Positions 4,388-45,349 of a DNA stretch of 64,000 bases are shown here, piece after piece. The stretch is taken from positions 91,946,001-92,010,000 of the forward strand of contig NC_043005.1 in the NCBI RefSeq assembly GCF_006345805.1. Reading direction: 5' to 3'. Both the position numbers and the translations under genes were made by a program. Origin of the DNA: Octopus sinensis. Taxonomy: Eukaryota. The number at the start of each line of letters is the position of its first letter. Positions within the stretch are counted from its first letter, which is position 1. The notes below the pieces were generated by a model. The model did no database searches. It had not been told where the DNA came from and was given only the letters and a program-made list of their open reading frames with translations.

Positions 4388-4424
<37 letters not shown>

Positions 4425-11537: not shown

Positions 11538-11601
11538 AAGCCATTTAATGGACTTGCTTAACTTTTCTGAAGAAAAGTTAAGCAAGTCCATTAAATGGCT
11601 T
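11538..11601. repeat. Perfect 64-bp palindrome (31-bp arms, 2-nt centre)
   Basis: aagccatttaatggacttgcttaacttttct GA agaaaagttaagcaagtccattaaatggctt; arms are exact reverse complements. Confidence 0.95.
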
Positions 11602-12780
11602 CTTATTATCTAGATTACAGTTACTGTGAAGCAGTGTTATTCATAGCCATACTTCTGCCATTAATACAATAGACTTTGCTTATTTTTAAAATTTACTTAC
11701 CTTTCCTCACTCATACCCTAAACTATCAGATATAATCACCTATTCATTTCTAGTTGTGTGTCTAGCCAAACATTACATGGTGTTCTTTCTGAAGAAGAAG
11801 GGCGTTGCACAGCTATTCTGTATAACTCTATTTCTTCTTATATATTCATTCCAAAGAGTATGATATGAGTATATCATAGTATACTAAGATAGCATAAATC
11901 TTATCATTCTCATTCATCCTCTCTTATTATTATGTTTAGAAAGTTCTGCTCCTTGAGTTATAGCAATTGCTTTTCTCATTAGATGTGATGAAAGATATAT
12001 AATTACAGTATATATTTCAAAAACAGCAAGTCATGAATAAACTATTTACATTAGTTTCCATCATTAGTTGCTTAAGAAAATGTTAACATGATCTGCTTAA
12101 TGATATTCTACAAAAGGGGTTTGATGGAAATCATGGAACCCAGTATGTCTACCCAAATGATAAGTATAAACTAGTGTAAAATAAATACATAAAAATTTCT
12201 GAATAAACTCAGTCATCCAGCAAAAATTGATGCATAATATTTTTGCTGTAGAGGGAAGATGTTGTTAGGGAATAATGTGGAACTAATATTAGGGCTAATA
12301 TTTTTAGATTCTAGAAAATAGAAAGGGATTAAGGGAAAACAATAGACAAAATCAGGTTAAAAAATAGGCAAAACCTAAAATATATCTCCCACATTTACAT
12401 GCTTTATTAAGTCTATCTTCTTCTAGTTCTTTATCGCTTCACTTAATCCACTATCCATTATTATCGATAATAATATACTTTATCATTGATTTAAAGAATA
12501 CTTTCACATATAATTCCCACTTTTAAGTTAAGGGTTATGCATGTCTGTGGAATGCTCAATCACTTACATGTTAATTCAAAAACAGGTAATTCAATTGATT
12601 GAACAGGTGAATCCTTATCATCAAACATTAGAGAAAAATAAACTCTCTCTCTCATAAATGGGAAAAGTATATATATATATATAAAAGAAATGATTGCAAT
12701 TCAGTTGAATTAGGTACTTAAGTTGAAGCACCAAGTCAGCCTGGTATGATCCACACAGCTTGAAGGCAAACAAAATCAAA

Positions 12781-13236
12781 ATAAGCAACAGGATATCAAG
12801 AAGTGATGCAGTACAACCATTTCAAACAGCTTCATTTAATTGAACAATGCAATCATTACATCAATTTAAATTAAGTGCCAGCTGATTATGGCACTTCATT
12901 TGAATTGATGTATATTTCTTTATTGCCCACAAGGGGCTAAACATAGAGGGGACAAACAAAGACAGACAAAGGGATAAAGTCGATTACATTGACTCCAGTG
13001 CATAACTGCTACTTTATTTATCGACCCCGAAAGGATGAAAGGCAAAGTTGACCTCAGTGGAATTTGAGCTCAGGACGTAACGGCAGACAAAATACTGCTA
13101 AGCATGTTGCCCAGCACACTAACGTTTCTGCCAGCTCGCCGCCTTATTTGAATTGATATAATGATTGCATTGTTCAATTAAATGGAGCTGCTTGAAACGG
13201 TCGTACTGCACCACTTCTTGATATCCTGTTGCTTAT
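12781..13236. mobile_element. Fold-back (hairpin) MITE-like element with ~100-bp inverted arms, interrupted by a SINE
   Basis: Left arm ataagcaacaggatatcaagaagt...aagtgcca (12781-12880), 8-nt loop, right arm tggcactt...gatatcctgttgcttat, split by the family A SINE. Confidence 0.8.
12913..13143 (-). mobile_element. tRNA-type SINE family A, nested in the fold-back element
   Basis: Reverse complement of the family A sequence. TSD atttgaattgat at 12898-12909 and 13146-13157. Confidence 0.9.
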
Positions 13237-14631
13237 ATATATATATATGCACATACATACATACATATATTCAAAAGCAGTTTTAGTTGAAACTTCCCTG
13301 CATGTTGTTTTATTCACTTGTTTCCCATTCTGAAGTAACCTATGGCGTGCAAAAAATTTCCACCTCACCACATTTTGAGAAGCACTGACCTAAAGCATGC
13401 TTCATTTATCAAATAGCAATTCCCTTGTCTATGCTACACGAATTATCTTCAACAATTTACGCCAAATAAAAGTAAATTTCTTGACTGTTTTCAGCCATTC
13501 TGTTGCTCTATACTCCTAGTTAAAAAAAAAAGGAAAGCATTTAAAGTACCACATTGTTGTGTTGTTAAATGACCTCATTAAGATACTTCAAAGAAAACTA
13601 ATATGTTTAGTGGTGCTGTCAATGTTTGTAATGCTTTTAGTCAATAGAGTGTTGATTAAGATACCTGCAGATAATTTAAGATTAAATTGGAATGAATGCA
13701 TTTTATACTTTTTCCATCCTGAAAACTGACATTTCTTATGGGATAACCTGATACTTATCCTATAAAATTAATGTTTTTATACACTGTAACATTGTCCCTT
13801 CTGAAATAAACAGAACCAACACACACAGATGCATGCATACACACAATTCGTTTCCTTTCCATCAACTCACTAAAGTAATGTTTTCAAGATATTCCAATGA
13901 CAAATATTGATATTTTTGTTGTTCACTAAAATAAATTTATTTACCCTCAAAAGGGTGGTGCATAGTAGAATTGGTAGTGTTGTGATATTTAGTTATACCT
14001 CTTTATATCTTGTGTTCAGATCTCTACAAATCATTTAAAGTTACCACAATCTCAAAGCATTAATCGCTATACATTATCTATTATCCACTATAATTTCTAT
14101 GCATAATTTATTTTTCACTATAATCTGTTTACATTAATTTCACTACTATTTTTGCACATTATTTATTCTTATTAAATAACTCTACACATAGTTTGGTTTT
14201 TAACAAAATCTTTACCATTTAATTTTTATCATGATTTTTATTATTTTTATCATCACCATCAAACTATTGTACTGCCCAATATCTATAAAATACAGACTTG
14301 TTTATTAAAACAGCCAGTATGAGTAACGTGCTTTTAATATTAAGCTCTATGGAAAATTTGGAGAACTCTTAAAAGGAATGTTAGGATATTGTAACATCTC
14401 TACATTTTGTTGATGGTGGAATGTTTTGTTATTCAATTGTAATTCAGTTTTCATCTTAAGCTGAATATTAAGTTAAATATTTTGCTTTCATGTTGTCTTA
14501 GAAAATATGGATCTAAATATCTGGCCAGTTATATGAATTCTTGAGTTCATATGACACTTAGCATTAATAATATTTATTACACAACAAACATTGTCTCCAG
14601 TTGTTAACTTAAGTCATTCTATGTCTATTAA

Positions 14632-14852
14632 CCCTTTAACATTTAAACCGGCCATATCCGGCCCAAATATTTAACCTGTTCTGTGTTCAAACTGGCCGGA
14701 TCTGGCTTTGCATACTTATCCTACAATGTCATTCTAAGAATAAGCAACTACATCCTCAAAATTTTAATGCTACGATGTCTTTGCATGATTAATTCAAAAC
14801 AATGTGAATAAATAAGCATTACATTTGACAGAATGATCTGAAAGCTAAACGG
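14632..14852. mobile_element. piggyBac-type MITE
   Basis: TTAA (14628-31) CCCTTTAACATTT...AAAGCTAAACGG TTAA (14853-56): TTAA target duplication and CCC/GGG-like termini. Second copy at 39558-39753. Confidence 0.75.
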
Positions 14853-15929
14853 TTAAACAACATGGCATTGCCAGTGTGAAAAACAACTGAATTTCTATAT
14901 TTTTCATTGCACAAATTCTTAACAATTAAATTTTTGAAAGTCAGTAATCCTGCAAAGAACTAAAGCAAACTAATATCTAATGTCTCAGCACAACATCTTA
15001 TTCTTAATTGTTTCTTACACAGGCAAGGAACTTGAGATTTTTCCTCTGTTAAGAGTGGGGAGCATTATCCACTTTTCCAAAGATATTCAATTATTAGTGG
15101 TGTCTCTGAGGAATCAAGAACAAGCCATTGATCTTGCATACTACAAGACTCTATTGTGCTTATTGATTATGAAAAATAATAATAAAAGTGGGGATTTGGA
15201 AGAATAATTAGTGTTCTGACTCTTCATGTTCTGATTTCAAATCTTACTGAGGTCAGCTTTACCTTTCACCCCAGGTCAGTACTGGGGACAATGCCTCTCA
15301 CTGAAATTTCTGGCCTTGTACCTAAATTAGAAACAATCATAAATAATAATATAATGTTTCCTAATTAACTTAAGCACTGAACTGATTAAAGATCATCCTG
15401 ATTTACTTGTTTGCAAATATGAAACTGGATTTAAAATGATTTCAGTTGTTCTTCCTAACACATCTATGTAAAATATCCTTTTGTTTTTGAGCCAATGTTT
15501 TTGGTTGCAGAGTAGGTTCTAAAAGAGATCAAGTGATAAAATATCTCATTCCAAAGTTGTTCTCAAACACACATCCTACTCATTGCAAACTGAAAAAGGT
15601 AAAAAGAAATTAGCAAGAAATATTTATGAGAAAAAAGATAAAATTAGATTCCATTCACATTAGCCATGTAGAATGTTCTGTGATTATTTTTGTGATTTGT
15701 GTGTATAGGAAACAAGAAAGAAAAATTAAATTTGTAGAGTTACAAAACAAATGAGGTTTCAAGATTATTGTTGATTATATGCTTGGAACATTCACAGTCA
15801 TCTGTTTTACATTGTAACCAAGCAAAATAGACAAAACTATGATTATAAGATATGGAAATGGTGTAGTTTTCAATTTTGCAAATGAAAGTTCAGTGAGTGA
15901 GCGTCCTTAATTTCTGCAAACATATTGAT

Positions 15930-16600
15930 GTTTCTTGAAACGATTTATGTTATACTAAGATTTGTCAGTGAAGCTATGGATGAGAGTCTCGTTCAATGTG
16001 GCTATTTGAGTCATAATTTTTTATCTATCAGTTGTTGTTCTCTATACTTCCCTTTGATCGTTATTAAAGAGGAAGGTGGCTCCATTCACAGTGCACCACC
16101 AGTGTGTTCATTTTGGTTGTTTGTTTTTACCTTCTAATTGTAGTTAGCTTGTATTGAAGGACTTCTTTACAGTCTTTAAGTTTCTATGGTGATAACCATT
16201 TGTTGCATCTATCAGTGGATAACTTTCCATGCAGTACGCATTTCGAAAGGTAATACTTTTCCATCTTGGATGTGTTGTACTCAACTTATATGCATCTTGA
16301 GAAGCCTGGCTATATTACTGGCATTTCTTGTCACATGGAATAATTCAGCATTCATGACCACGTCTCTTACTGAATTTTATTGATTGTTTATAGATAATAC
16401 TGATGGAAGAGTTCAAGGAAATGTAGAAATTGAGTCAACTTGATAGTCATTGACATGACTGTTTTATAGACTCTGATTTTTGGGACTATCATCAGATTTT
16501 TTTTTTTTTTGCTTTTCCAAGAATTCACATGTAGTTTGCTGAAGGTTCCTTTGTTCACCTTGATTAGTCTACTGTCCACTTTTTGGCCAATCTTTGGAAT
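15930..16600 (-). mobile_element. Degenerate RTE-clade LINE 3' fragment (RT C-terminus)
   Basis: Minus-strand translation ...GTFSKLHVNSW...KIRVYKTV...LELFHQYYL... resembles the RTE post-RT region (AF..L...VW....TK..VY.....LE.FH..CL). Many stops and frameshifts. Confidence 0.6.
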
Positions 16601-17063
16601 AAAGAAAATGCTACTTCTATTAACGTATTACTCCACTCCAAGATGAAATTGTAGCTAATTATCTAACTGTAATCATTCATATTCCTTCTTAATGATTAGA
16701 TTTTAATTCTTTGAGAATATGTGATGATATCTTGGAGCAGAGTATTGTTTTAAAAGAAATACTTTAAGGCGAACAATTACCATGATACTTTCTTCTATAT
16801 ATTGATGGTTAAGGTAACGCTTTTTCTGTATAATGGAAAATAATATAGATCAGTCCAAATCTACATGAACATGCTCATATTTTAAATGAAATTTAATAAT
16901 CATTAAAATTTTTTTAAATCAATGCATCTGAGACTTTATAATGTTATACCTATCATGACAGTGTCTCAAATTATAGAAATAGGTCTACCTTAGCAACTAC
17001 TTTTAAAACATAACAATTTCAAGTTCTGAACCATCGTTAGTTTTAACTTTTTACTCCTTGCAG

Positions 17064-20000
17064 AAATTGAATCTGTCAAACCTTTAGGCCTGGTAGATAA
17101 GGAGGATGGTGATGTACTTACCTTTACTGGAGAGAAGCAGCAAGTTCATTCTGACCAATTTGGTGAATCTGATAAGTCTAAACATTCTACAATGTCTGTG
17201 CAAAAAGAATCTGATAGTCTCTTTTCTGCAAACAGGGGAGATGTTAAAATTTCTCCTGGCAAAACTTTAGACATTACAATGAAAAAAACTGAAGAGTCTT
17301 ACTTAAATGAAATACCTGAAGGAAAAGTTCATTCAATACAGAAGCCAAGGTTTCCTTTCCAAAGTACTCCGTCAGCTGACAGTTCCAGAAAGATGTTTGA
17401 GCAATCTCCATTTACTGAAGATGATAAAGCAACAAAAATGATCAAACAACCCAGTAAACAGACAGTTGACCTTCATAACAACGAAGTTGAAGAGGAAAAA
17501 GTTGGATTTGTCCAAAAATCTAGATTTCCATCTAATGTCAATATGCCAAGTCAACTTCCGACAAAAATTTTTTATGACAAAGAAGACAAAGACCACAAAG
17601 AGGAACTTGTCACCCCCAAAATAACATCAACACATGAAACTAAACGAAAAGTTGTAAAGGAATATCAACAGGCAGATGAACAAGCACGTTCTGATTTAAA
17701 AGACCCATCAACCAAATTGTCAACAAAAGTCCTACATGATACTGATAGTAAAGACAAATTTCTTAAAAAACCAGTGAAAGATACTAGTGAAGAAAAATTT
17801 GGGGTGGCAGATAAGAATGTACTTCTAGCTCCATCAATTCCATCATCAGGTGATAGTCAACATAGTGATAAAAGTTCCTCTCAGAACATTGGTGGGAAAA
17901 TTACCAACAAACAGCCTCCAAAGGAAGATGATTCATTTAATCCCTTTGATAAATACTATAGAATTAAAAAGGACATCAAAATATCTCCCAGTAATACAGA
18001 TGGCTCTGAAAAAGTTTCTACAGTAAATTTAGAAAAGCCTACAGATGGTGAAATGCCTGAAGAAAAACTTGAGGCAACAGACAAGCCAAGGCTTCCTTTC
18101 CAAGCTTCTCCTTCAGTTCTCAGTTACAAAAGAAAAATCTTTGAGCAATCTCCATTTACTGAAGATGATGATAAAGCTAGGAAAATGGTCAAGCAACTCC
18201 CTAAACAGAATAACAAAATAGAAGAGGAAAAAGTTGCAGTTATCCAAAAATCTAGATTTCCATCTATCAAGAAATCAAATCAACTTTCAACTGATAGGGA
18301 GAGTAAGGATGATGCTCAAGATAAGAAAGCTGTCCCTCAAATTTCAAAACTTGATAAACCAAAAGATGAACTGACAGATAAAAAATCGTACTCTCTCTCA
18401 AAAGACCCAGTTCTACATGATACTGACAGTAAAGACAAAATTCTTAAAAAACCAGTGAAAGATACTAGTGAAGAAAAATTTGGGGTGGCAGATAAGAATG
18501 TACTTCTAGCTCCATCAATTCCATCATCAGGTGATAGTCAACATAGTGATAAAAGTTCCTCTCAGAACATTGGTGGGAAAATTACCAACAAACAGCCTCC
18601 AAAGGAAGATGATTCATTTAATCCCTTTGATAAATACTACAGAATTAAAAAGGACATCAAAATATCTCCCAGTAATACAGATGGCTCTGAAAAAGTTTCT
18701 ACAGTAAATTTAGAAAAGCCTACAGATGGTGAAATGCCTGAAGAAAAACTTGAGGCAACAGACAAGCCAAGGCTTCCTTTCCAAGCTTCTCCTTCAGTTC
18801 TCAGTTACAAAAGAAAAATCTTTGAGCAATCTCCATTTACTGAAGATGATGATAAAGCTAGGAAAATGGTCAAGCAACTCCCTAAACAGAATAACAAAAT
18901 AGAAGAGGAAAAAGTTGCAGTTATCCAAAAATCTAGATTTCCATCTATCAAGAAATCAAATCAACTTTCAACTGATAGGGAGAGTAAGGATGATGCTCAA
19001 GATAAGAAAGCTGTCCCTCAAATTTCAAAACTCGATAAACCAAAAGATGAACTGACAGATAAAAAATCGTACTCTCTCTCAAAAGACCCAGTTCTACATG
19101 ATACTGACAGTAAAGACAAAATTCTTAAAAAACCAGTGAAAGATACTAGTGAAGAAAAGTTTGGGGTGGCAGATAAGAATGTACTTCTAGCTCCATCAAT
19201 TCCATCATCAGGTGATAGTCAACATAGTGATAAAAGTTCATCTCAGAACATTGGTGGGAAAATTACCAACAAACAGCCTCCAAGGGAAGATGATTCATTT
19301 AATCCCTTTGATAAATACTACAGAATTAAAAAGGACATCAAAATATCTCCCAGTAATACAGATGTCTCTGAAAAAGTTTCTACAGTAAATTTAGAAAAGC
19401 CTACAGATGGTGAAATGTCTGAAGAAAAACTCGAGGCAACAGACAAGCCAAGGCTTCCTTTCCAAAATGCTTCTTCATTTGTCAATTCCAGAATAAAAAT
19501 GTTTGAAAAATCTCCACTTACTGAAGATGATGATAAAGCTAGGAAAATGATGAAGCAAGCCCCTAAACAGACAGATAATAAGAAAGTAGTAGAGGATGAA
19601 ATTGGGACTACCATAAAACCTAAATTTCCATCAGGAATTTCCTCCCCAAATTGGTCTTCTGTAAAGAAAGCAAATGAAAAAATTGGGAAAAATCTAAAAG
19701 CAACAACTCCTGTAAAAACAAGGGACACACCAGATAATACAGATTTTATTGACAGATCTGAGTTAAAAATTCAAATCCAAGAAAAACAAAGAATTGTATT
19801 CTCAAGAAAGAAACCCAGTGACAGTGTATCAAGGAATTTCCTTGAAAGAAATATTAAAGACTCCTCAGGTGAGAGAGATTCTACATGTACACCAGCTAAG
19901 AGCTCTTCAGAGCAAGTAAAGGATGTTAAAAAGAAGAAAAATTCACAAATAGAAATCGTTCCAGTTGCAGGAAAATCTAGATTTCCATTTCGAGGAGAAG

Positions 20001-23000
20001 CGCCACATCATCATTTGAGTAAAGATACTTCAGAGAATCAAGTGGCTGATGTGAAGGACGTTATGTCTAAGCAAATTTCAGAGTCTCGGGAAACAGAAAA
20101 CAATAGAAGTGGACAAGTTTCTGATAAAGATCACACCATTCAACATAAACCACAAACAGATTTTTACAAAACTAATATCCAAGACTTCCACTCAGATTCT
20201 GGTATCCAGTACCCTAATTCTCAAAAGGATCCTACTTTTCTTTCTACAAAACCAAAAAGTGTTCACTTAGTTGATAATTCTAAAAGCCCTATTCAAGACA
20301 AAAAAGAAGTAATTTCCTCTGTTAAGGAATCCCAGTTGGATTCTTTTTCACATAAAGATAAAATATCACCATCCTTGCCTTCACCTTCAAATAACACTAA
20401 CCAAGTCTCAAGCATAAGATCTGAACAGAAGGGTGTATCCGATCCTGAAAAATATAACAATGATAAACTCGGGTTATTATCAGCAGCCAGTGATGGTAGA
20501 AAGGTACCCATCCATCCTGATCTAATATCATCTACAAATGATTGGATAGATCATAAAGAAACTAAATTACCATTTAGTTCCAGAGAAACCATCAAAAGAA
20601 GTAAACCTAAAACTTCTAATAGTTCTGGAAATATTTTATCTGTAGGTCATGTGGTCCCTTCTGATGTAAGACCTCAGTTAGCATCAAAACCAGTAACCGA
20701 TAAGCCTACAGCTAGTAGTTCCCTTTCTAAGCCTATTACTGCAGCCCAGACCTCTCAGCAGACGTCTCTCAATTGGATAGATCGAAAAGAGACATTCTTT
20801 TCTGCTGAGCGCACAAAAGCAACAAGAAGAAAGCACAAATCTGAAAAAGATGAGTCAGATGAGAAAAAATCTACATCTGATGATTATAAGTCATTTCCAG
20901 AGAAGTATCCTGAAAATAGACCAGGTAGAGTTGATCAAAGTCCTTCTTCTAGGCATTCCCAATCAGATAATAAAGTAAAGAAATTCTCAAGTAGTAATTA
21001 TTCTGAAGTAAAGGAAGTTGGAATTTGTGAAGCTAAGCAAAAATCTGGTTTGATAACTCCCCCAGTTAAGGAAATAACTTGCAAAGCTCCATTAAAAATA
21101 AATATTGATTATAAGAGTGAAACAGCTGTAGATTGTCCCAAAGATGTGGTATCAACACCTCACTGTGAATCTGATAAATCAACTGCTAACATATCCAATG
21201 TTCATGATGAACAAACTGATAAGAAGAATATACCAAGTTATGAAAATGTAGGGGTGTTCAGTGAACCTGATATGAAAATGAATTTAGAAAATGAAACATC
21301 TGGAACCAAATCTGCTGATAAGCATGTGGCAAATTTGGCTTCTCAAAAAACAAAAGATGGACCAGATGAAAAGATATCTTCTGACAAACTTGTAACAAAC
21401 AAGACTCCTCCAAAATCAAAAGAAACAACTTTTGGTCCGGATATAAAGGAACCAGATGATAAACATGTGGCAGAAGTTACTTCTTCAAAATCAAGAGAAA
21501 CAACTTTTGGTCCAGACACAAAGGTATCAGCTGATAGACATGTGGCAAATTTGGCTTCTCCAAAAACAAAAGAGACAACGTTTGGACCAGATGAGGATAT
21601 ATCAGAGAACAGACATGTGGCAAATTTAGTTTCTCCAAAATCAAAAGAGACAACATTTGGTTCCGAAGAAAACATACCTGCTGTTAAACAGTTTGCAAAA
21701 ATGACAATACCCGAAACAAAAGAATCAGATGAAAAGATATTTGCTGTCAAACTTGATGCAAATTTGAATTCTCCAAAAACAAAAGAGACAACCTTTGGTC
21801 CAGATGAAAAGACACAAGATGATAAACATGTGGTAAATGTGGCTTCTCCAAAAACAAAACAGACAACATTTGGCCCAGAAGAAGACATATCTGTTGTTAA
21901 ACAGTTAGGAAAAATGACATTACCCAAAACAAAAGAATCAACATTTAGTCCTGACAAAAACATATCTGCAGACAAACATGTGGAAAATTTGGCTTCTCCA
22001 AAATCAAAAGAGACAACATTTGGTTCAGAAGAAAATATAACAGCTGACAAACATGTGGCTAAGTTGGCTTCTCCAAAAAGAAGAGAAACAACATTTGGTT
22101 CAGAAGATAATATATCAGCTGACAAACATGTGGCTAAGTTGGCTTCTCCAAAATCAAAAGAGACAACATTTGGTTCAGAAGAAAACATATCAAATTACAA
22201 ACATGTGGCAAAGTTGGCTTCTCCAAAAAGGCGAGAGACAACATTTGGTTCAGAAGAAAACATATCAGCTGACAAACATGTGGCAAAGTTGGCTTCTCCA
22301 AAAAGAAGAGAGACAACATTTCGTTCAGAAGAAAACATATCGGGTGACAAACATGGGGCGAAGTTGGCTTCTCCAAAAAGAAGAGAGACAACATTTGGTT
22401 CAGAAGAAAACATATCTGCTGACAAACATGTGGCAAAGTTGGCTTCTCCAAAAAGAAGAGAGACAACATTTGGTTCAGAAGAAAACATATCAACTGACAA
22501 GCATGTGGCAAAGTTGGCTTCTCCAAAATCAAAACAGACAACATTTGGCTCAGAAGAAAACATATCTGTTGTTAAACAGTTAGCAAAAATGACATTACCC
22601 AAAACAAAAGAATCAACATTTAGTCCTGACAAAAACATATCTGCTGACAAACATGTGGCACATTTGGTTTCTCCAAAAACAAAACAGACAACATTTGGTT
22701 CAGAAGAAAACATGTCAGCTGACAAACATGTGGCAAATTTGGTTTCTCCAAAATCAAAAGAGACAACATTTGCTTTAGAAGAAAACATATCTGCTGATAA
22801 ACATGTGACAAACTTGGCTTCTCCAAGATCAAAAGAGAAAACATTTGGTTCAGAAGAAAACATATCAGCTGACAAACATGTAGCAGATTTGGCTTCTCCA
22901 AAATCAAAAGAGACAACATTTGGTTTAGAAGAAAACATATCAGCTGACAAACATGTAGCAGATTTGGCTTCTCCAAAAAGAAGAGAGACAACATTTGGTT

Positions 23001-25733
23001 CAGAAGAAAACATATCAGCTGACAAACATGTAGCAGATTTGGCTTCTCCAAAATCAAAAGAGACAACATTTGGTTCAGAGGAGAACATATCAGCTGACAA
23101 ACATGTGGCAAACTTGGTTTTTCCAAAATCAAAAGAGACAGCATTTGATTCAGAGGAAAACATATCAGCTGACAAACATGTGGCAAATTTGGCTTCTCCA
23201 AAATCAAAAGAGACAACATTTGGTTCAGAAGAAAACATATCAGCTGACAAACATGTGGCAAATTTGGCTTCTCCAAAACCAAAAGAGACAACATTTGGTT
23301 CAGAAGAAAACATATCAGCTGACAAACATGTGGCAAATTTGGCTTCTCCAAAATCAAAAGAGACAACATTTGGATCAGAAGAAAACATATCAGCTGACAA
23401 ACATGTGGCAAATTTGGCTTCTCCAAAATCAAAAGAGACAACATTTGGTTCAGAGGAGAACATATCAGCTGACACACATGTGGCAAATTTGTTTTCTCTA
23501 AAATCCAAAAAGGCAGTTGGTTCAGAAGTAAGTGTATCTGCTGATAATGAAATATTACCAAAAACAACAGTTTTGCTTTCAAACAGAAAATTGGACAATA
23601 ATGAAGCAGTTTCATCCGACCATCCTGAAGAATTAGCACAGGACAAAGCTAAAAAAAGGATTGGCAGCAGACCAAAACAGGAGAACAGAGTTTCTGCTAG
23701 CCGCACACTACCTACTATTACTAGATATGTATCGAGTCTACAGAGTGAAAGAACTCCACCATCCATCAAAAGCCCTACAGAATTAGATAAACCAAGTAGT
23801 TCTTCACTTGATGTCCACTCTACAATGACCAGTGGTAAACTAGAGCTAAGTATTGATGATAAAAAAGAGAACAGTGATACAACTTTGGTCCTTAGTAAAC
23901 CTGAGGATGAAGCTGTTTACTGGATTGACAGAAAAGAGAATACATTTTCTCCAAACTGTAAAGCATCATTGAAGAAAAAGAAACCTGTAATTTCTCAGTC
24001 ATTTGAGGAAAAATTATCATCAGGGTTTGGATTACAACATAAACCTTTATCAGCTACTTCTATTTCATTTGGAAATGAAGTTTCTCAATCAAAGAATGAA
24101 TCTGAAGCAGTCAATCTTAACTCTGTGTCAGAAGATGCACTCTCCAGTAGTAAAGTAATACCAAGATTCAGTTCATGGATTGGTTTTAAGAAAAATGATT
24201 CTACCCCTGAATCAGTTGGAAGTGCTAGCATCAAGCATAACCAGAAACAATACTCCATGCCCATGAAGGAAGATAAAAAGTTAGATGTTAAGGATTTAGC
24301 ACAAACAAATAATACCATAAAACAATTTAATGATGTGGTTGGAGTAAATAGACCTTTACCTCCTGCGCCATCTATGACCACCGATGTTTCAGAGCCATTG
24401 CTAGATTGTTGGGTTGAAAGGAAGGAATCTTTTCTTTCTGATTCCAAAGCAAATTCTGGACATTGGATATATACACACACAAGACCACAGTTATTTGCTA
24501 AAAACGACAATAACATAGAAACTTCTGGGAGAAGTGAAAAGTCTAATGAATTTGTTAATTATGAATCTAGCTATGGGAATGAACCGGAAACTCCCAATAC
24601 AGCTGATTTTCCTATAAAGGAAAACAAACTTCAGCAAAAAAGTATTGAAGACACATATTTGAATAAAAAAGCGGCTTCTGAATACGGCCTTGACAGTGTA
24701 AATTCTAATGAGGATGTCTACCCTCTGGAGGAAGAAGGTATAAAATTAAAAGTTGAATTAGAATTTAATCAGGGTGTTAGCAGAACAGATACTCAGGCAC
24801 CTGAGGATCAATCTTTTACTTTTGTCAAGGAATACACTTCTGTTGAACCTAATAGTTCTCAGTCTGAAAAGTTCAGAAAACCATCTCAATCAGATAGCAA
24901 TAACAAAGACTTGTCCAAAATGCCTGAGTCTGGAGTATATTTTGTTGAAATGAATTCTGATGATGGTGAAGAATCAAATATCTCTGGTTATCCTGTTGAA
25001 TACAATAATGGCATTATATCATATTCATCATATCCCAAGCAACAAAATCTGTCATCAGAGCCTTATGCAGAATCAGACCCTTCTAAACAGTCAAGTTCTG
25101 ATCATTATGAGCCACAAAAACCTACAATGAAATTGAGACAGTCTCAGAAAAATTATTCACCTCATTTCACTGAAAGTGTAAACGAAACTGAAATTGATTC
25201 ACACTTTGAGAATAATTCGGAAGCAGACATGCTATCCAAATGGAATGATACTAATAGTCCTGTCAAAGCAAAATCTATTACATCAGATTTTTCTCCTAGA
25301 GAAAGAAATTATCAAGACACCCCATCGTTTTCAGAATCTTGCTCATCTCGAAGTCATCCTGTTAGAGAAATGTCTCCAATTGCAAATCTCCGTGATATGG
25401 TTCTCAATGATGAAAAACTTGCATATCAACAATTCCTAAATAAGCCTTCTGGAAACTACAAAAACTTAAAACAATCTCCTGAAAATCAATATTCATCAAA
25501 AGCACTGAATTATCGTTTGTATGAGGATGACAATATCTTTAAACCCACAGAATTAAGTGATGCTTTTGAATATACTTCGTCTACTTCGGAAATGTTACCA
25601 AATCCTGCTGCACCCAACCGGAACAAAACAAAATATAACACTCAACCATCACATAAATTTGTTCAGTCAGATTTAACAGATTCCTCTCAACAGTATGTAA
25701 ACACTGATTCATCTGATTTTGTTGTGGACTCAG
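17064..25733 (+). CDS. SYTL4/5-like: Synaptotagmin-like protein, giant internal exon (8,670 nt, 2,890 codons, phase 1/phase 1), low-complexity and repeat-rich
   Basis: Acceptor ttttactccttgcag| at 17063; the frame is open from 17066 through ORF 17192-25747. Donor CAG|GTAGAC after 25733 leaves one base (G), which joins the next exon's GG in frame. Attachment to the C2 exons is inferred from phase compatibility and the absence of an intervening gene. Confidence 0.75.
17732..19465 (+). repeat. Coding tandem repeat, 681-bp (227-aa) unit, about 2.5 near-identical copies plus an older diverged copy at ~17250-17730
   Basis: ctacatgatactga recurs at 17732, 18413 and 19094 (period 681). By eye, about 4 differences between copies 1 and 2 and about 6 in the partial third copy. 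Confidence 0.95.
21290..23550 (+). repeat. Coding minisatellite, 75-bp (25-aa) unit SKETTFGSEENISADKHVANLASPK, 27 recognisable units plus 3-4 degenerate ones
   Basis: catatcagctgac recurs at 23161 and 23236 (period 75). Units counted in the ORF translation. Confidence 0.95.
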
Positions 25734-26255
25734 GTAGACATCTTTGATATCCTCTCATAAACTCATATCAACAATACTGACAGCCTTCCTTTTAATTTGT
25801 TTTTCCTACTTTCTTCGTAAAGTGAAGAACTCTCTTTTATTATATCAACTAACCACTGTATCAGTATCTATTATTTGGGCAATAAAGTGAATTTATACCA
25901 TTTATTCAATTTTCTCAGCTAACATGAACTTGTGCACCTCTATTTTTATATTTTATACTTTGTATTGTCCTGTGCACCTCTATTCTTAACATTTTGAATT
26001 TCTGTTGGTTATATATTGCTCAGAATTATCCCCACTTTTAAATAAAATTACTTTGATATTTATTTTAAACCTTCTGTTATGCTTGTAGAGCTTTGATGGA
26101 ATTATCTCAATAAACTGGTAAAATTTTCCGACTTCTATTAATACATCCAAAACTAGTGAATACTAATTTTGTTTTTGTCCATCTTCCTCATGTTGATGCA
26201 AATTATTTAAAGTATATTTTCTAACAATTCTAATCGTTTGTATTATCCTTTTAAA

Positions 26256-26620
26256 GTGCAGGCATGGTTGCAATGTTAAGAAGCCCCCTTTGCAACCATG
26301 TGGTTTTGTGTTCAGTCCTACTGAGTGACACCTTTGGCAAGTGTCTTCTACTATAGCTTGGACTGACCAATGCCTTGTGAGTGAAATTTGGTAGGCAGAA
26401 ACTATAAGGAAGCCCATCATGTGTGTGCATATATATACACGTGTGTGTGTGTGTGTGTCTTTGTGTTTGTGCTTGTAGCCACCAAAAGAGATAGAATAAG
26501 TAGGTAAAAGAAACTGATAGAATAAGTATCAGATTTAAAAATAAATACTAGGGTCAATTTGTTTAACTAAACCCTTCAAGGTATTGCCACAGCATAGCAC
26601 TGAAACAAGTAAAAGATAAA
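26256..26620 (+). mobile_element. tRNA-type SINE family B (central TG/TA tract), degenerate
   Basis: Head ...GGTTTTGTGTTCAGTCCTACTG..GGCAAGTGTCTTCTACTATAGC, tail CTGAAACAAGTAAAAGATAAAAG. Related copies at 38720-39150(+), 42510-42852(+), 44657-45050(-), 55274-55702(+) and 59881-60273(-). Confidence 0.8.
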
Positions 26621-28034
26621 AGTTAAAAAAAAGAAAACTAATCATGTCTATTGATAATGTGACCAAAGGAATTTGGATTATGTTATGAGCAATGTATTAT
26701 TTAAAAAATAATTATTGTTTAGTTAAAGACTGAAGATCAGCAATAATGACATTTTAAGGCCCTCGTGGATAAGTATGATTGATGTGACTGTATTCAGTTT
26801 AACCTTCTGAAAGTTGGTGTCCTCAAGAAAATTATTGGTAGTGTGAAATTTCCAAAGAGCTGCACCTTTTGAAACTATCAAATGTGGATTTTGGTGGGTG
26901 AGAGACAGGAGGGATAACAAAGAAAGGGAAGCGATATCAAGTCAACTTAGGTGGGTGGGTTTCATAGCCCTTTTTCAGGATAGTAGAAGACACTTGCTCA
27001 AGAAATGAGGAAGATATAGTAAAAGTAATAGAAGAGAAGAAACAGTGTTTGGTAAAGGCTCCATTACCAATACTCTAGAATCAGCTGTTTACCGTTTTTT
27101 TTCATTTTTTAAATCCAATGGCAGTTGAATCCTAAATTATATCACAAGCATTTTCTGTTTGTCATGGTCTGCTATAGAAACCTGACCCTGTACTAATTAG
27201 TTGCTGACACATTGCTGCTACTTGGAATTTTAGTCTCATTTATTCTCCACGGATAGAATTGAAGACATTTTCAGAAAGACTCATTTACTTAGCTTGAAGT
27301 TATCAAGTATATGATACAGGGGGATCACATTGTTTTCTGTAGAGATTCCTTAAGGAATAAAGCATTGGTAAATAATTGACATTAGGAGAGAGGGAGAGAG
27401 AGATGGCTTAGTCTGTTCATCATCTGAAATTTTATTTACTATCTATTAATGTCATATATCAATAACAGTGACAGTATTAGGTTTATCCTATCAAATTAGT
27501 TGTTCATATTTTAATATGTTTAGCACTCACAAGGAAATTTACCTCTCCTGCTTCAGTTATGCAAAAATAACTATTTTTGCATAAAATTATTATTGTCATC
27601 AGAATCTATAGTGATATTGTATTCTTAACCTCCATTCTTGTACGTTAGTATGAATTTGACACATCTGTAATACGGTACCAATTCGTTTGTATTGATTCTG
27701 TGTCAATTCTTATGTGAGGCACATTGTTCTCTGATGCTATCTTACTTCTTCCTTCCAAGTTATTCTTGGTCTCTCTCAACCACAGTGCACTTTACTCTCA
27801 ATAAATGGCTCTTTTTCACCCAGCATGTATCATCTACTCACATTACATGTTCTTACCAGTAAAGATGTCTCTCCTGCATAATCTGGCCAAGCAACATAAG
27901 TTAAGTATGCCCTAAAGTTATCTGTGTGTTCTAAATTAATAATTTTAAAAATGACTATAACCGGTGGGATTTACAGAATGCTTAGGGGATTTGTTTTGGA
28001 GGAGGTGGTAACCTTAATTCAGAAGTATAACTTT

Positions 28035-28071
<37 letters not shown>

Positions 28072-28464
28072 TTTCATGGAAAGTAAAACTTTTATAAGTA
28101 TTTATTTTTAGCTAAAAACGCTTTATATTAATAACCATATTTTAGGCTAATATTAATTATAATTTAAAATAAAAAGTATTTTTCTTTTTAATCATACTTT
28201 ATAAAATCTGCAAGTTCAAAATAATTGCATAGATTAATCTAACACTTTCTTTTTTATAGTTGGTCACTTGCATTAACATCAAACACTCATGTGTTGGTCT
28301 GAGGCAAATTGAATGATGCATGTGACCTAAGAATACATTACAATCCATTTCAAGGTTTAGACGTATCACTTTCTAGCCAATAGATTACCATTTTGACTCA
28401 CTCATTTGTTCACTCATAGCACTTTGTTGATCATTTCCTACTTGTCATATTTTTAATCACAAAT

Positions 28465-28597
28465 GAGATACCCAAAGAACAGGATATCTGACTCACTAGA
28501 AAGAGCAGTTAAACTCCAAGCCACTAATTGGAGTTTAACAGCTTGGAGTTTAACTGCTCTTTCTAGTGAGTTAGATATCCTATTCTTCGGGTATCTC
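28465..28597. repeat. Near-perfect inverted repeat: 57-bp arms, 19-nt loop
   Basis: gagatacccaaagaac...aaactccaagc / gcttggagttt...gggtatctc; 3 non-Watson-Crick positions. Confidence 0.95.
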
Positions 28598-29074
28598 TTT
28601 TGTGTTTGAACGTACACTGTATTCTTCTTTGAATAACATATAGTCTATTGACTAATTTTTTCCTTCTTGCTAGACCACTGGTAACTAAGAATTTTTTCAA
28701 AAAATATTCTTGCTACCCTAAGATTTTAATTAATGATAAAATGTCATATTTTTAAAGTAATTTCATTCGGCAATGATACAATTTTTATAGTTTGCTTTGG
28801 AGTTTCTCTTTCTCTTTTTTTTTTTGCTCATCAATGTTTCTGGTTTATTAAAAAGGGTTTTATCACCTGTGAAAGTAATTGTTCTGGAAAGACCATCAAG
28901 TCATATTTGGTAATTAACCTCAGTGTTTTGCTATTGAGTTTCCTTCAGAGTTCAATCTATCCCACAAGAGGAATTGGCCTCAGTCAATTGATAATAAGAT
29001 GAAGAAAATGCCACAATAAAAGATGCCTTGGCCCCATTATAAAAGATTAATTTATGTGAGGGAAATGTGGAGGT

Positions 29075-29395
29075 TAATATTTGTAAATGGACAATTTCTC
29101 AGCAGGACAGTGTGTGTAGACATCTGTAACGGGACAATGGACGTTGACATTTGTAGAGAGACATTGAATTTTGATGTTTGTAAGGGACAGTGAATATTGA
29201 CATTCTTAAGGGGTAGCAAATGTTGACATTTGTAAGGGGAAGTGTTGATATTCATGTTGATACATGCAAGGAGACAGTGTTGACACTCCTATGAAGATAG
29301 TGGAAGTTGATACCTATAAGGGGTTAGTGAAGGTTGAGACATGCAAGAGTTAAGTGAAGGTTGAAATTTGCAAAGGATTTATGAAGATTGACCCT
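29075..29395. repeat. Degenerate minisatellite (~20-27-bp unit, gacatttgtaagggacagtgtt / gttagtgaaggttga)
   Basis: Recurring TTGACATTTGTAAGGG-like and GTGAAGGTTGA-like motifs. Confidence 0.6.
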
Positions 29396-30569
29396 TTTCT
29401 ACGTATATTATAAAGTTATGATTGAAATAATTGAAGAATCACAACAAAAAAAAATTTTAAAAAACTCCTTGGTTTCAACTTCCTGAGTCATAATTTGATG
29501 CAGTGTTGTGTTGCATTTAATGGTGAAGTACTAAACATGTACTCAGTACACTTGTGTATCAGAGTAGATGTTGGTGCTGAGTCAAGTAGAAACCAACAAG
29601 TTGTTTATCTATGGTGCTGAGACCAAATCTTCTGATATGGAATAAAAGAAATATTGATTTAGTATATTGGTACAATGTCAGAAGTTTGTGGGAGAGTCAA
29701 TTGAATGGGTCCCAGTACATGCCTTGGAAACATTTTATTGATTCTGAAAGTATAAAAGCAAAATCAAAGTAGAGTAAGATTTGAACTCAAATGCAGAGGA
29801 ATGAAATCAGATGCCTTAAGTCTTATGTTGTGCCAGCTCTGCTGTTCCACTACCTTTTTAATAGCGGAAAATTTTAGAAGTAAAAAAAATATGAATGAAT
29901 AAAAAAAGGGTTTATTGTTTGTACTGTGGGTTACCAAAATGTCTGTTGATGAAACGTTTTTCTTTAAGTTTGTGTAATATGTTTTGTTCTTTATTTTCTT
30001 CAGACCCAAAAGTAAAAGCATAAGAAACATGTAAAAATTTCTGTCAGTTATATACTTACTATAAACACAAAATCTTATTTAAATTAATTTGCATTTTTTT
30101 TTTCATTTATTTTTGCATTTGTTTCTTTTTTATTTTCCATGCTTGAATGAATCTTTGAAAATTTGTTTATGAATTGTTGGAATTTCGCTTTTTTCACCCT
30201 TTTTAACAACTGGATGTCCAGTCAGGTAATTAAAAGCAAGCAAACATAATGTCTGTTTGCACAGTAGTTCAGTTGATTAAGTTCACAGCCATTGGGAGTT
30301 GACCAAATGTTTCTAGAAAGAGCAATAAGCCAAAGAAACGAAGCCAGAAAGGAAACATACAGGTGAGACAATAAAAAAAATACTTATTGGATCAGACCTC
30401 ATATAACTCATTCCAACATGGAAAAGCCAGTGTAAAAGAACAGTGATGATTATGATTTGATTAATATAACAAAAGAAGAAGCTAATTGCATAACTAATTC
30501 ATTACTTTGCTTACAATTGATTTCTGTTATTTAGAATTTATTTCACCTTTAATTTGTTTGTATTTTTAG

Positions 30570-30766
30570 GGAAGAAACAAAAGCATGCATCTCAAGCAAG
30601 CAGTGAGGATGCCCGATCTGAAATCAGCAATCAGAGCTATATGTATGATCAACAAAGTGACAGCAGTTCAGTTCACACCACACCAGACCACCGAACCAAT
30701 GGAAGCAAGCGTAGATTAGACATAGACCCATCTTTACCATCAATCACAATATCAGAAGCTGAAGGG
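30570..30766 (+). CDS. SYTL4/5-like: Slp exon (Ser-rich linker, GKKQKHASQ...ITISEAEG), phase 1 to 0
   Basis: tttgtatttttag| acceptor and |gtgagt donor; open frame within ORF 30554-30787. Confidence 0.8.
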
Positions 30767-30906
30767 GTGAGTTTTTGCTTTGATTGATTTACTTCTGTAA
30801 GGTTTCTGGTGGTGGGAGAGATATTGTAAGCACTAAAGTTGGGATTGGCTGTAAAACAGGATATGGAGTGTAAGGTGACATAGATTGGAACTGGTAGATC
30901 AGACCA

Positions 30907-31170
30907 TCATCATCATCATCATTTAACGTCCGCTTTCCATGCTGTCATGGATTGGACGATTTGACTGAGGTCTGGCGAACCAGAAGGCTGCACCAGACTC
31001 CAGTCTTGATCTGGCAGAGTATCTACAGCTGGATGCCCTTCCTAACGCCAACCACTCCAAGAGTTTAGTGGGTGTTTTTATGTGCCACCAGCATGAAGGC
31101 TAGTCAGGCGATACTGGCAATGGCCATGCTCAAATGGTGCTTTAATGTGCCACCTGCACAGGAGCCAGTC
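30907..31170 (-). mobile_element. Family C element (CAT-repeat end on + strand)
   Basis: catcatcatcatttaacgtccgctttccatg...gatgcccttcctaacgccaaccactcc. Confidence 0.8.
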
Positions 31171-33700: not shown

Positions 33701-33817
33701 TTAGCGTCGACTCATGGCGAAAGTGATGGGGAAAACCACGATTTTCTTATGAAAGGCAGCCAATCTATACGCAGTGGACAAAGCATGTCTTCCAGTCTTG
33801 GCTTGACATCATCGATG
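33701..33817 (+). CDS. SYTL4/5-like: Slp exon (LASTHGESD...SSSLGLTSSM), 117 nt, phase 0 to 0
   Basis: ttctttctggcctcag| acceptor and ATG|gtaaga donor; 39 codons. Confidence 0.85.
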
Positions 33818-33987
33818 GTAAGAGAAACGGTTGATCTCCCTCCTTTACACCCGAAGCACAAATAAGCCTCCACATGAGCTGATTGGCTACAGTGACATAC
33901 AAACAAAACAAAACAAACACAAAATTACTTTCTGGAGAAGAGATAGCTGGCAATTTCCTGCTTTTCTCTGTTTTGCTTGCTCCTGTC

Positions 33988-34639: not shown

Positions 34640-34824
34640 GGAAGCCGTGACAGTCTAAGCAGTTACTACAGCAATGCCGGTGAAGTCAACTATGGTAAGA
34701 TAAATGTGACTGGTGACATTCAGTTTGGTTTGGACTATGACTATAAGACAAGTTGCCTTGAAATTCGGGTCAAGCAGTGTCGTAATTTAGCCCCTGCTGA
34801 TGTCAAGAAGAACAAATCAGATCC
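34640..34824 (+). CDS. SYTL4/5-like: Slp exon, start of C2A (GSRDSLSSYYS...GDIQFGLDY...QCRNLAPADVKKNKSD), phase 0 to 2
   Basis: tcgtttcag| acceptor and |gtaaga donor; the S..S.YS.AG...G...V.G.I.F motif is typical of Slp4/5. Confidence 0.95.
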
Positions 34825-35881: not shown

Positions 35882-35984
35882 GTATGTTAAAAGTTACCTT
35901 TTACCAGATAAAACTAAAACAGGCAAGCGGAAGACTAAAGTAAAGAAAAACAGTCTGAATCCTACATTTGATGAAACACTCAGG
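35882..35984 (+). CDS. SYTL4/5-like: Slp exon, C2A polybasic strand ([35 protein letters not shown]), phase 2 to 0
   Basis: gtttcattcag| acceptor and AGG|gtaagt donor; too short for the ORF track, translated by hand. Confidence 0.95.
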
Positions 35985-36078
35985 GTAAGTAAAGATATAT
36001 TTTCCATTATTATTATTATCCTGTGAGTATTACTTTTCTACACTGTCAGGAATTGAACTGCTCGGCAATCCTGCATTA

Positions 36079-38349: not shown

Positions 38350-38703
<354 letters not shown>

Positions 38704-39841: not shown

Positions 39842-40065
39842 CAAGAATATTTGCCATCATCTCTTTCATACAAAGGCGAGCTGACCTTATCGTTAAAGTT
39901 TGTAACTGGTGATAAACTGCTAACGGGGTCCACAACATCTTTAAAGCACAGTAGAGAAGGCAGATCTGAAGTTTCAGATGGAGGACAACTTCATGTTTAC
40001 ATTAAAGAGGCCAAAAATTTGACAGCAGTTAGATCTGGAGGATATTCTGATCCTTTCTGCAAAGG
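39842..40065 (+). CDS. SYTL4/5-like: Slp exon, start of C2B (QEYLPSSLSYKGELTLSLKF...LHVYIKEAKNLTAVRSGGYSDPFCK), phase 0 to 2
   Basis: ttttctgtag| acceptor and GG|gtaagt donor. Confidence 0.95.
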
Positions 40066-42875: not shown

Positions 42876-43084
42876 GTATTTATTACCAGAAAAGAACCGA
42901 TCATCAAAGCAAAAAACTCCAGTGGTAAAGAAAAATTGCAACCCGGTTTGGAATCATTCCTTTATATTTGAAGATGTGTCTGCTAGTTTATTGGCTGACC
43001 GATGCCTAGAACTCACTCTGTGGGATTATGATCGTATATCAAGTAATGATTTTCTTGGTGGCGTTCGACTGAATTTAGGATCAG
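42876..43084 (+). CDS. SYTL4/5-like: Slp exon, C2B core (GYLLPEKNRSSKQKTPVVKKNCNPVWNH...LWDYDRISSNDFLGGVRLNLGS), phase 2 to 1
   Basis: ctcactttgcag| acceptor and CAG|gtaaga donor. Confidence 0.95.
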
Positions 43085-45209: not shown

Positions 45210-45349
45210 GTATTTGTGGTCGGAGATATGTTGATTGGATGGATGCTGTTGGTGATGAAATCTCATTGTGGCAGTCAATGATATCTCGACCAAACACTTG
45301 GGTTGATGGAACTCTTATGTTACGTGCAAACATGAGTAACAGAATGTGA
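45210..45349 (+). CDS. SYTL4/5-like: Slp terminal exon (GICGRRYVDWMDAVGDEISLWQSMISRPNTWVDGTLMLRANMSNRM*)
   Basis: ttctctttag| acceptor; the VDWMD..G.E..LW..M...P..W..GTL.LR tail is characteristic of Slp4/5; TGA at 45347-45349. Confidence 0.95.

What the first reader, a model, noticed from the sequence alone, without database searches (positions are those of the whole stretch)
17064..25733. Giant 8,670-nt symmetric exon turning a Slp/bitesize protein into a >3,300-aa scaffold
One uninterrupted 2,890-codon exon begins and ends in phase 1, so it can be skipped without frameshift. It encodes a Ser/Lys/Glu/Asp/Thr-rich, probably disordered region that would separate the upstream Rab-binding domain from the C2A/C2B membrane-binding tandem by thousands of residues. 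Large alternative middle exons are known in vertebrate Slp2 and Drosophila bitesize, and giant exons in ankyrins. I know of no description of this size and repeat content for a cephalopod Slp. Inference: a tissue-specific giant isoform acting as a long vesicle-to-membrane tether or cortical scaffold.
Basis: partly seen in the sequence, partly recalled or inferred. Interest (0 to 1): 0.75.

Follow-up and report, generated by a model that had tools for sequence, protein, structure and literature searches.

The report
Giant last exon of octopus Slp
The 8.7-kb open exon is real and transcribed, but it works as an alternative last exon that gives an octopus Rab-binding (Slp-type) protein a 2,900-residue repeat-rich tail in place of its membrane-binding C2 domains; this layout is already in public gene models and resembles vertebrate exophilin-5.

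Summary
The open frame at 17064-25733 is real: it has an AG acceptor, 2,905 open codons (chance about 1e-82) and a Ser/Lys/Glu/Asp/Thr-rich, hydrophilic sequence. It holds 3 x 681-nt repeats and about 28 x 75-nt repeats.

It is not a cassette between the Rab-binding domain and the C2 domains.
- The frame runs only four codons past the proposed GT donor to a TGA at 25745-25747.
- Thirty-one of the 32 NCBI Octopus sinensis isoforms of LOC115215841 (all 20 sequences held here but X32) end there.
- All three O. bimaculoides models stop 31 codons earlier, so the donor is not conserved as coding.
- Contigs from four transcriptome-like runs read straight through the GT and end at 26036-26073, at or just past an AATAAA.
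- No contig joins 25733 to 30570.

The Rab-binding exons lie 57-252 kb upstream of the exon, outside the window, and are spliced to 17064 in the public models. The genome encodes a 3,330-aa protein with no C2 domain.

The C2A/C2B exons (30570-45349) are expressed in separate spliced contigs. These carry 30 nt of an upstream exon that lies outside 25000-30999. The likeliest candidate is the exon that also feeds the giant exon.

Best reading: an alternative terminal exon that gives an exophilin-5-like isoform of an Slp4/5 orthologue. Scallop has a comparable C2-less isoform.

The parts
17064..25747 (+). Coding part of the giant exon. The acceptor AG is at 17062-17063 and the exon starts in phase 1. 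It holds 2,889 full codons, then four read-through codons (G R H L) and TGA at 25745-25747.
   Evidence: The 19 O. sinensis isoform sequences that end ...VVDSGRHL match it.
25748..26073 (+). 3' UTR of the giant terminal exon. AATAAA sites lie at 25881, 26041 and 26109. Contigs end at 26036, 26062 and 26073 in three runs; a fourth runs on to 26419.
   Evidence: (table 8)
25734..25739 (+). It is weak, unused in the data examined, and not conserved as coding in O. bimaculoides.
17500..19542 (+). Three tandem 681-nt (227-aa) units. Copies 2 and 3 are nearly identical throughout; copy 1 matches them over about 440 nt.
21363..23510 (+). Tandem array of about 28 units of 75 nt (25 aa, consensus EENISADKHVANLASPKSKETTFGS), 82% matches. 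It is open in several frames on both strands, which explains the minus-strand ORFs listed there.
20543..24427 (+). Span holding five short W-[IV]-x-x-K-[EK] motifs, four of them W[IV][DE][RH]KE followed by F. They start at 20543, 20774, 23921, 24176 and 24410. Four are kept in O. bimaculoides.
29264..29322 (+). 5' exon of the NCBI model 'synaptotagmin-like protein 5' (XP_029640499.1). No contig joins it to 30570; it is probably a model completion.
30570..30766 (+). First exon of the C2 branch (phase 1 in, phase 0 out). It sits in spliced contigs of 0.3-1.7 kb in all four runs.
   Evidence: (table 8)
33701..33817 (+). Linker exon of the C2 branch.
34640..34824 (+). C2A exon 1.
35882..35984 (+). 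C2A exon 2 (Pfam C2, E = 9e-7).
38350..38511 (+). C2A exon 3 (Pfam C2, E = 2e-7).
39842..40065 (+). Linker and C2B exon 1.
42876..43084 (+). C2B exon 2 (Pfam C2, E = 2e-17).
45210..45349 (+). Last coding exon of the C2 branch, including the stop codon.

Best explanation
The window holds the 3' half of the octopus orthologue of Slp4/5 (Drosophila bitesize). Four upstream exons, outside the window, encode the Rab-binding Slp-homology/FYVE_2 domain and a 290-aa linker. From the last of these (phase 1, ending ACAG) the transcript has two outcomes.

(a) Shown: splicing to the acceptor at 17064. The transcript then runs through 8.7 kb of open frame, reaches TGA at 25745-25747, and is cleaved and polyadenylated near 26060-26075. 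This gives a 3,330-aa protein made of the Rab-binding domain plus a long hydrophilic, repeat-rich tail without C2 domains.

(b) Inferred: skipping that terminal exon and splicing to 30570, which is in frame. This would give a classical Slp of about 881 aa with C2A-C2B.

The giant exon is therefore an alternative last exon, not a cassette.

By analogy with the C2-less Slac2 proteins, above all exophilin-5/Slac2-b, the giant isoform should be recruited to Rab27/Rab3/Rab8-type vesicles by its N-terminus. Its tail, which carries repeated short motifs, would then bind partners that are still unknown, rather than docking the vesicle to the plasma membrane. Rab binding and tail function are inferred, not shown.
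For: Terminal use of the exon:
- Nineteen of the 20 O. sinensis LOC115215841 isoform sequences retrieved end ...VVDSGRHL, which is the read-through of the GT; none has a C2 domain.
- Three O. bimaculoides models end 31 codons earlier, at ...YNTQPSH.
- In four transcriptome-sized runs from three studies and two organism labels, contigs of 2.6-3.0 kb cross 25733 unspliced and end at 26036, 26062 and 26073, close to AATAAA at 26041-26046. One runs on to 26419. No 25733>30570 joint is listed, although joints with sides of only 20-24 nt are.
- The runs behave as RNA: exon 30570-30766 is bounded exactly at AG/GT in all four, and intron depth is low.

Upstream link:
- The models read KKT-E-IESV across exon 4 to 17064.
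- The N-terminus matches FYVE_2 at E = 4e-18. It also matches the Rab27-binding domain of melanophilin (2ZET, E = 3e-10), Slp4 and rabphilin.

Same locus as the C2 exons:
- Mussel, zebra mussel and nemertean Slp4/5 align collinearly with the octopus SHD exons and C2 exons.
- Exon 4 ends in phase 1 and exon 30570 starts in phase 1.
- In three of four runs the exon-30570 contig carries exactly 28+2 = 30 nt (k-1 for k = 31) of an upstream exon ending AG that lies outside 25000-30999. That is what a de Bruijn branch at a shared upstream exon would give (the k = 31 reading is my inference).

Precedent: Pecten maximus LOC117327904 has isoforms X1 (SHD+C2), X2 (SHD plus a roughly 400-aa tail without C2) and X3 (C2 only).
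Against:
- NCBI annotates the C2 part as a separate gene in both Octopus species (XP_029640499.1, XP_014784551.1), each with its own short 5' exon. This would fit two genes rather than one.
- Contigs drop rare variants, so minor use of the 25733 donor cannot be excluded.
- The runs are labelled only 'RNA? (a guess)'.
- No sequence similarity links the tail to exophilin-5 or to the scallop tail.
- Rab binding and disorder are inferred from sequence only.
Confidence: 0.75

Rival explanations
1. Gene fission. In octopods the ancestral Slp gene has become two independent genes. One is an SHD-plus-giant-tail gene (LOC115215841) that ends at about 26.07 kb. The other is a C2-only 'Slp5' gene with its own promoter downstream of it. 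The giant exon is then the constitutive last exon of its own gene.
For: NCBI annotates two genes in both O. sinensis and O. bimaculoides, and Argonauta hians also has a C2-only 457-aa model. No public protein of 365-1160 aa or 1589-5056 aa was found that joins the octopus SHD to the C2 domains.
Against: The 5' ends of the C2-only models differ between species, and the O. sinensis one needs an unexplained 8-nt piece between 29322 and 30570. No contig joins 29322 to 30570. Instead, the exon-30570 contigs carry 30 nt of an exon that lies outside 25000-30999 and behaves as a branch point. Phases match for exon 4 to 30570. Scallop keeps both outputs in one gene.
Confidence: 0.2
2. The exon is an in-frame (phase 1/1) cassette that places about 2,890 residues between the Rab-binding domain and C2A/C2B in a tissue-specific isoform of about 3,770 aa.
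For: Phase arithmetic allows it, and CAG|GT is present at 25733. Other animals do have internal spacers of 1,500-3,000 aa between SHD and C2. Only four runs of unknown tissue were examined, and contigs drop rare forms.
Against: No joint was found in four runs, and the contigs read through. None of the 20 O. sinensis isoform sequences retrieved uses the donor. The word search over 1589-5056 aa found no protein with the giant exon plus C2. O. bimaculoides has its stop 31 codons upstream of the equivalent donor. The donor lacks +4A and +5G, unlike the gene's used donors.
Confidence: 0.05

Closest known systems
Exophilin-5 / Slac2-b (EXPH5), vertebrates
   Same: Both have an N-terminal Rab27-type binding domain, then a very long tail without C2 domains that is encoded largely by one giant last exon. 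For EXPH5, pathogenic variants from c.1395 to c.5786 all lie in exon 6 (PMC4695416). EXPH5 is a Rab27 effector in exosome and vesicle traffic (PMC10511049).
   Different: No sequence similarity of the tails was detected. EXPH5 was not in any tool's hits here, so it was never compared directly. Human EXPH5 is about 2,000 aa (my knowledge), against 3,330 aa here. The octopus tail has young tandem repeats. The octopus exon sits inside a locus that also carries C2A/C2B exons, whereas EXPH5 is a separate gene.
Pecten maximus LOC117327904 isoform X2 (XP_033741031.1)
   Same: It is a molluscan Slp4/5 orthologue. About 540 N-terminal residues (SHD plus linker) are shared with the C2-bearing isoform X1, followed by an alternative tail without C2.
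   Different: The tail is only about 400 aa, has no detectable similarity to the octopus exon, and has no 25-aa array.
Drosophila Bitesize (Btsz) and other giant Slp proteins
   Same: Same family. They have many isoforms and large alternative exons that encode disordered regions with binding functions, such as the Moesin-binding exon 8 (PMC10153138). Predicted proteins of 2,000-3,300 aa with a matching SHD and the C2 tandem occur in arthropods, amphioxus and Mytilus; a 4,365-aa mite model has the C2 tandem but no SHD match.
   Different: [quoted passage not shown] In octopus the giant exon ends the protein. None of the 150 representatives resembles the octopus exon.
Melanophilin/Slac2-a and MyRIP/Slac2-c
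   Same: They have an SHD with zinc fingers and no C2 domains; the best solved-structure match of the octopus N-terminus is melanophilin with Rab27B (2ZET). They link Rab27 vesicles to myosin and actin (PMC10511049).
   Different: They are much shorter and have defined myosin- and actin-binding regions. No such region was recognised in the octopus tail.

Membership tests
Synaptotagmin-like protein (Slp4/5, bitesize) gene | N-terminal Slp-homology / FYVE_2 Rab-binding domain with zinc fingers | tested here: met
   Pfam FYVE_2 E = 3.7e-18 over residues 9-120 of the O. sinensis protein. PDB matches are melanophilin 2ZET, Slp4 2CSZ and rabphilin 1ZBD. The exons lie upstream of the window.
Synaptotagmin-like protein (Slp4/5, bitesize) gene | C-terminal tandem C2A-C2B | tested here: met
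   For the locus: Pfam C2 matches exons at 35.9, 38.35, 39.9 and 42.8 kb. The octopus and Argonauta 'Slp5' models map to these exons and hold two C2 domains. The best profile hits are Slp4/Slp5.
Synaptotagmin-like protein (Slp4/5, bitesize) gene | SHD and C2 tandem present in one polypeptide | tested here: inconclusive
   This holds for bivalve and nemertean orthologues. For octopus no model or contig was seen that joins them. It is supported only by phase, collinearity and the branching upstream exon.
Giant isoform as a classical Slp (vesicle-to-membrane tether) | The giant exon's product is followed by C2A-C2B | tested here: not met
   There is a stop at 25745-25747. The models end there, the contigs read through to a poly(A) site, and no 25733>30570 joint is listed.
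Slac2 type (Slp homologue lacking C2 domains), exophilin-5-like | SHD present, no C2 domain in the protein | tested here: met
   Pfam finds only FYVE_2 in the 2,482-aa isoform and nothing in the 2,889-aa exon. The precomputed Pfam annotation for all isoform clusters is PF02318 only.
Slac2 type (Slp homologue lacking C2 domains), exophilin-5-like | Orthology or sequence similarity of the tail to EXPH5, melanophilin or MyRIP | not tested
   No EXPH5 sequence was returned by any tool, so no comparison was made. Pfam and PDB searches give no match for the tail. The resemblance is architectural only.
Slac2 type (Slp homologue lacking C2 domains), exophilin-5-like | GTP-dependent binding to Rab27 or related Rabs | not testable with these tools
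   Needs pull-down or two-hybrid assays with octopus Rab27, Rab3 and Rab8.

The most novel reading that the evidence does not exclude
One molluscan Slp4/5 locus makes both a C2-bearing Slp and, through an alternative last exon, a C2-less Slac2/exophilin-5-like Rab effector. This dual output would be old, because it is present in scallop as well as octopus. It would offer a model for how the vertebrate C2-less Slac2 genes arose: duplication of such a locus followed by loss of one branch. In octopods the C2-less tail has expanded to 2,890 residues by recent tandem duplication and carries lineage-specific W-I-D-R-K-E-x-F motifs that are likely binding sites.
Probability: 0.3. Interest if true: 0.5.

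Novelty: new member of a known kind. Interest (0 to 1): 0.35.

Why it matters
The result corrects the reading of a striking feature. The giant exon removes the membrane-binding C2 domains rather than spacing them away from the Rab-binding domain, so the predicted cell biology changes from a tether to a Slac2-type adaptor or a competitor for Rab.

It also suggests that two NCBI genes (LOC115215841, and 'synaptotagmin-like protein 5', with the giant one called 'titin' in the newer O. bimaculoides annotation) may be the two outputs of one Slp locus. Together with the scallop isoforms, it gives a testable link between the Slp and Slac2 architectures.

The protein itself is already in public annotation, and giant disordered Slp/Btsz forms are common, so the surprise is moderate.

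Tried and rejected
- Pfam on the 2,889-aa exon gave nothing.
- A search for the N-terminal exons inside the window found none.
- The word search with the giant exon found only Octopus proteins, none with C2.
- The C2B exon was searched against 1.84 billion representatives. No octopus protein appeared among the best 150, and none resembles the giant exon or exon 30570.
- The Mytilus Slp query found no octopus hit.
- A profile of homologues plus octopus exons, entered as separate rows, found Argonauta Slp5, and through its cluster the O. sinensis and O. bimaculoides C2-only models. It found no SHD+C2 octopus protein.
- The W-motif and the K[PS]RFPF motif were sought in 293 other fetched proteins and found in none.
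- A protein-level match on contig C21 proved to be an unrelated 25-nt satellite.
- The end of isoform X32 (…PKT-IQN) maps to 26145 without an AG acceptor. I left it as an unexplained model detail.
- The bacterial promoter/terminator scan is irrelevant to this genome and was not used.
- The earlier finding returned by the search of earlier findings (an inversion 32 kb beyond the window) has no bearing, and a word search gave nothing.
- No paper mentions LOC115215841.
- The spliced model was never joined. Exons were searched and aligned one by one, by reference.
Full report
**What is in the sequence**

The window is G000:C9:91946001-92010000 of a 2.72-Gb octopus assembly. On the + strand one frame is open from 17030 to 25744, which is 2,905 codons. 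With 6.3% stop trinucleotides in this AT-rich window, the chance of that is about 1e-82.

A polypyrimidine tract and AG end at 17063, so an exon starting at 17064 begins in phase 1. At the other end CAG|GTAGAC lies at 25733/25734. However, the frame continues for four codons (G R H L) to TGA at 25745-25747.

The translation is S/K/E/D/T-rich. Its mean Kyte-Doolittle value is -1.06, and no 60-residue window rises above -0.35. It has 32% charged residues with a net charge near zero. Pfam finds nothing in it.

It contains three 681-nt units. Copies 2 and 3 are almost identical, and copy 1 matches them over about 440 nt. It also contains about 28 units of 75 nt at 21408-23510.

**What it is attached to upstream**

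A word search with the exon found O. sinensis LOC115215841, 'uncharacterized protein', with isoforms X1-X32 of 2,482-3,205 aa. It also found an O. bimaculoides protein that is 85% identical where alignable.

These proteins start with a Rab-binding Slp-homology/FYVE_2 domain (Pfam E = 4e-18). That domain matches the Rab27-binding domain of melanophilin, the Slp4 zinc finger and rabphilin.

None of the 436 N-terminal residues is encoded in the window. They map to four exons at C9:91710798, 91753849, 91799084 and 91905190, which is 57-252 kb upstream of the giant exon. The last of these ends ACAG|GT in phase 1. The models read KKT-E-IESV across the join to 17064.

**Cassette or last exon**

Four lines of evidence say last exon.

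1. Nineteen of the 20 O. sinensis isoform sequences retrieved end ...VVDSGRHL, which is the read-through of the GT. None has a C2 domain.
2. All three O. bimaculoides models (2,064, 2,927 and 3,013 aa) end 31 codons earlier, at ...YNTQPSH. The stretch holding the proposed donor is therefore not conserved as coding.
3. I laid Logan contigs of four transcriptome-sized runs (three studies, two organism labels) on 25000-30999.
   - In all four, one contig of 2.6-3.0 kb crosses 25733 without a splice.
   - In three it ends at 26036, 26062 or 26073, close to AATAAA at 26041-26046. In the fourth it runs on to 26419.
   - No 25733>30570 joint is listed, although joints with sides of only 20-24 nt are listed.
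   - The runs behave as RNA. Exon 30570-30766 appears with boundaries exactly at its AG and GT in all four, inside contigs that continue into sequence not on the stretch. Intron depth is low.
4. The GT has neither +4A nor +5G, unlike the GTAAGT/GTGAGT donors used elsewhere in the locus. It is the only phase-1 GT in the last 150 nt.

The 'symmetric exon' is thus a formal possibility rather than an observed splice pattern. The genome encodes 436+1+2889+4 = 3,330 residues.

All 19 full-length NCBI isoform sequences held here are shorter than that by multiples of 25 or 227 residues. The 75-nt unit contains both a GT and a CAG. These 'introns' could therefore come from copy-number differences between the individuals sequenced, or from repeat misalignment, rather than real splicing. 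I could not test this.

**The C2 exons**

Eight exons between 30570 and 45349 encode a linker and C2A-C2B. NCBI calls them a separate gene, 'synaptotagmin-like protein 5' (XP_029640499.1, 467 aa; O. bimaculoides XP_014784551.1; Argonauta 457 aa).

The predicted 5' exon at 29264-29322 is doubtful for three reasons:
- it differs between the two Octopus species;
- it needs an unexplained 8 nt to reach 30570;
- no contig joins it to 30570.

Instead, in three of four runs the contig holding exon 30570 extends exactly 28 letters beyond an alignment that already includes two extra matching letters (AG). That makes 30 letters of an upstream exon that lies outside 25000-30999. Thirty is k-1 for 31-mers, so I read this as a graph branch at an upstream exon with two alternative continuations.

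Exon 4 fits: it ends in AG, is in phase 1, and also splices to 17064. This is an inference, because I did not see the letters.

Independent support that the SHD exons and the C2 exons form one orthologous unit comes from two results. Mussel, zebra-mussel and nemertean Slp4/5 proteins align collinearly with the octopus exons, which were entered as separate rows and never joined. The profile's best hits are Slp4/Slp5 across animals.

**Comparison with what is known**

Predicted proteins of 2,000-3,300 aa with a matching SHD at the N-terminus and the C2 tandem at the extreme C-terminus occur in an ant, mites, a spider, a scorpion, a beetle, amphioxus and Mytilus trossulus. A 4,365-aa Tetranychus model has the C2 tandem but no SHD match. 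A giant spacer in this family is therefore not new. None of these proteins resembles the octopus exon.

Drosophila Btsz has nine isoforms, all with the C2 domains (PMC10153138).

The architecture found here, an SHD plus a very long C2-less tail from one huge last exon, is that of exophilin-5/Slac2-b. Its exon 6 spans at least c.1395-c.5786 (PMC4695416), and it is a Rab27 effector (PMC10511049).

Pecten maximus LOC117327904 provides a molluscan precedent within one gene: X1 is SHD+C2, X2 shares about 540 residues with X1 and then has a roughly 400-aa tail without C2, and X3 is C2 only. The tails share no detectable similarity.

**Mechanism proposed**

The choice is between two events: splicing of exon 4 to 17064 followed by polyadenylation near 26.06 kb, and skipping to 30570.

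The giant product should bind Rab27/Rab3/Rab8-type vesicles through its SHD. It cannot bind the plasma membrane through C2 domains. Its tail is likely disordered and multivalent, with:
- eight K[PS]R[FL]P motifs;
- four W[IV][DE][RH]KE motifs followed by F, where about 0.001 would be expected by chance; three of them, plus the related WIGFKK site, are kept in O. bimaculoides, and none occurs in 293 other fetched proteins;
- about 28 copies of a 25-aa unit.

It may act as an adaptor, as Slac2 proteins do, or as a competitor of the C2 isoform for Rab. This part is inference.

**Limits**

- Run kinds are guesses and tissues are coded.
- Contigs cannot exclude rare junctions.
- The joined spliced model was not built or searched.

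**Verdict**

The ORF is real, expressed and already annotated. The cassette and tether interpretation is not supported. The exon is best read as an alternative last exon that makes an exophilin-5-like isoform of an Slp4/5 orthologue.

Noticed in passing
window 21343-23769, minus strand: ORFs of 281, 524 and 339 aa on the opposite strand lie wholly inside the 75-nt tandem array. They are open only because the repeat unit lacks stops in those frames, so they are not evidence of genes.
   Followed up: partly
window 26200-26399 and 30800-30999: Summed contig depth jumps to 4,000-16,000 in all four runs, and many short joints link 263xx-266xx to 3090x. These are two copies of a high-copy interspersed repeat flanking the intron.
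   Followed up: no
L008 (G000:C21:10029358-10033242), positions 1500-2757: A 25-nt satellite (about 50 copies, 93% matches) gave spurious protein-level matches to the 25-aa repeat region. It is unrelated to the gene.
   Followed up: yes
O. bimaculoides XP_052826917.1 (P0319): The newer NCBI annotation names the orthologue of the giant protein 'titin'. This looks like a misnomer, probably driven by size or repeats. Its N-terminus is exon 4 of the Slp gene preceded by a different first exon.
   Followed up: partly
O. sinensis isoforms X21 (P0011) and X32 (P0016): X21 replaces the SHD exons with a short alternative N-terminus ahead of exon 4, so a giant isoform without the Rab-binding domain is also predicted. 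X32 leaves the exon at about 23566 and ends in three codons that map to 26145 without an AG acceptor.
   Followed up: partly
window 1-306 and 55700-56260, 62600-63940: Open segments here look like transposase or retroelement fragments (for example ...FYQDNAQPHTAR..., mariner-like, at 55932-56258). They lie outside the gene's coding exons.
   Followed up: no
G000:C1205:10317-10544 (L001): This is the only other FYVE_2 match in the genome at E <= 0.001 (E = 2.4e-8, with one TAA inside). It may belong to rabphilin or another Rab effector.
   Followed up: no
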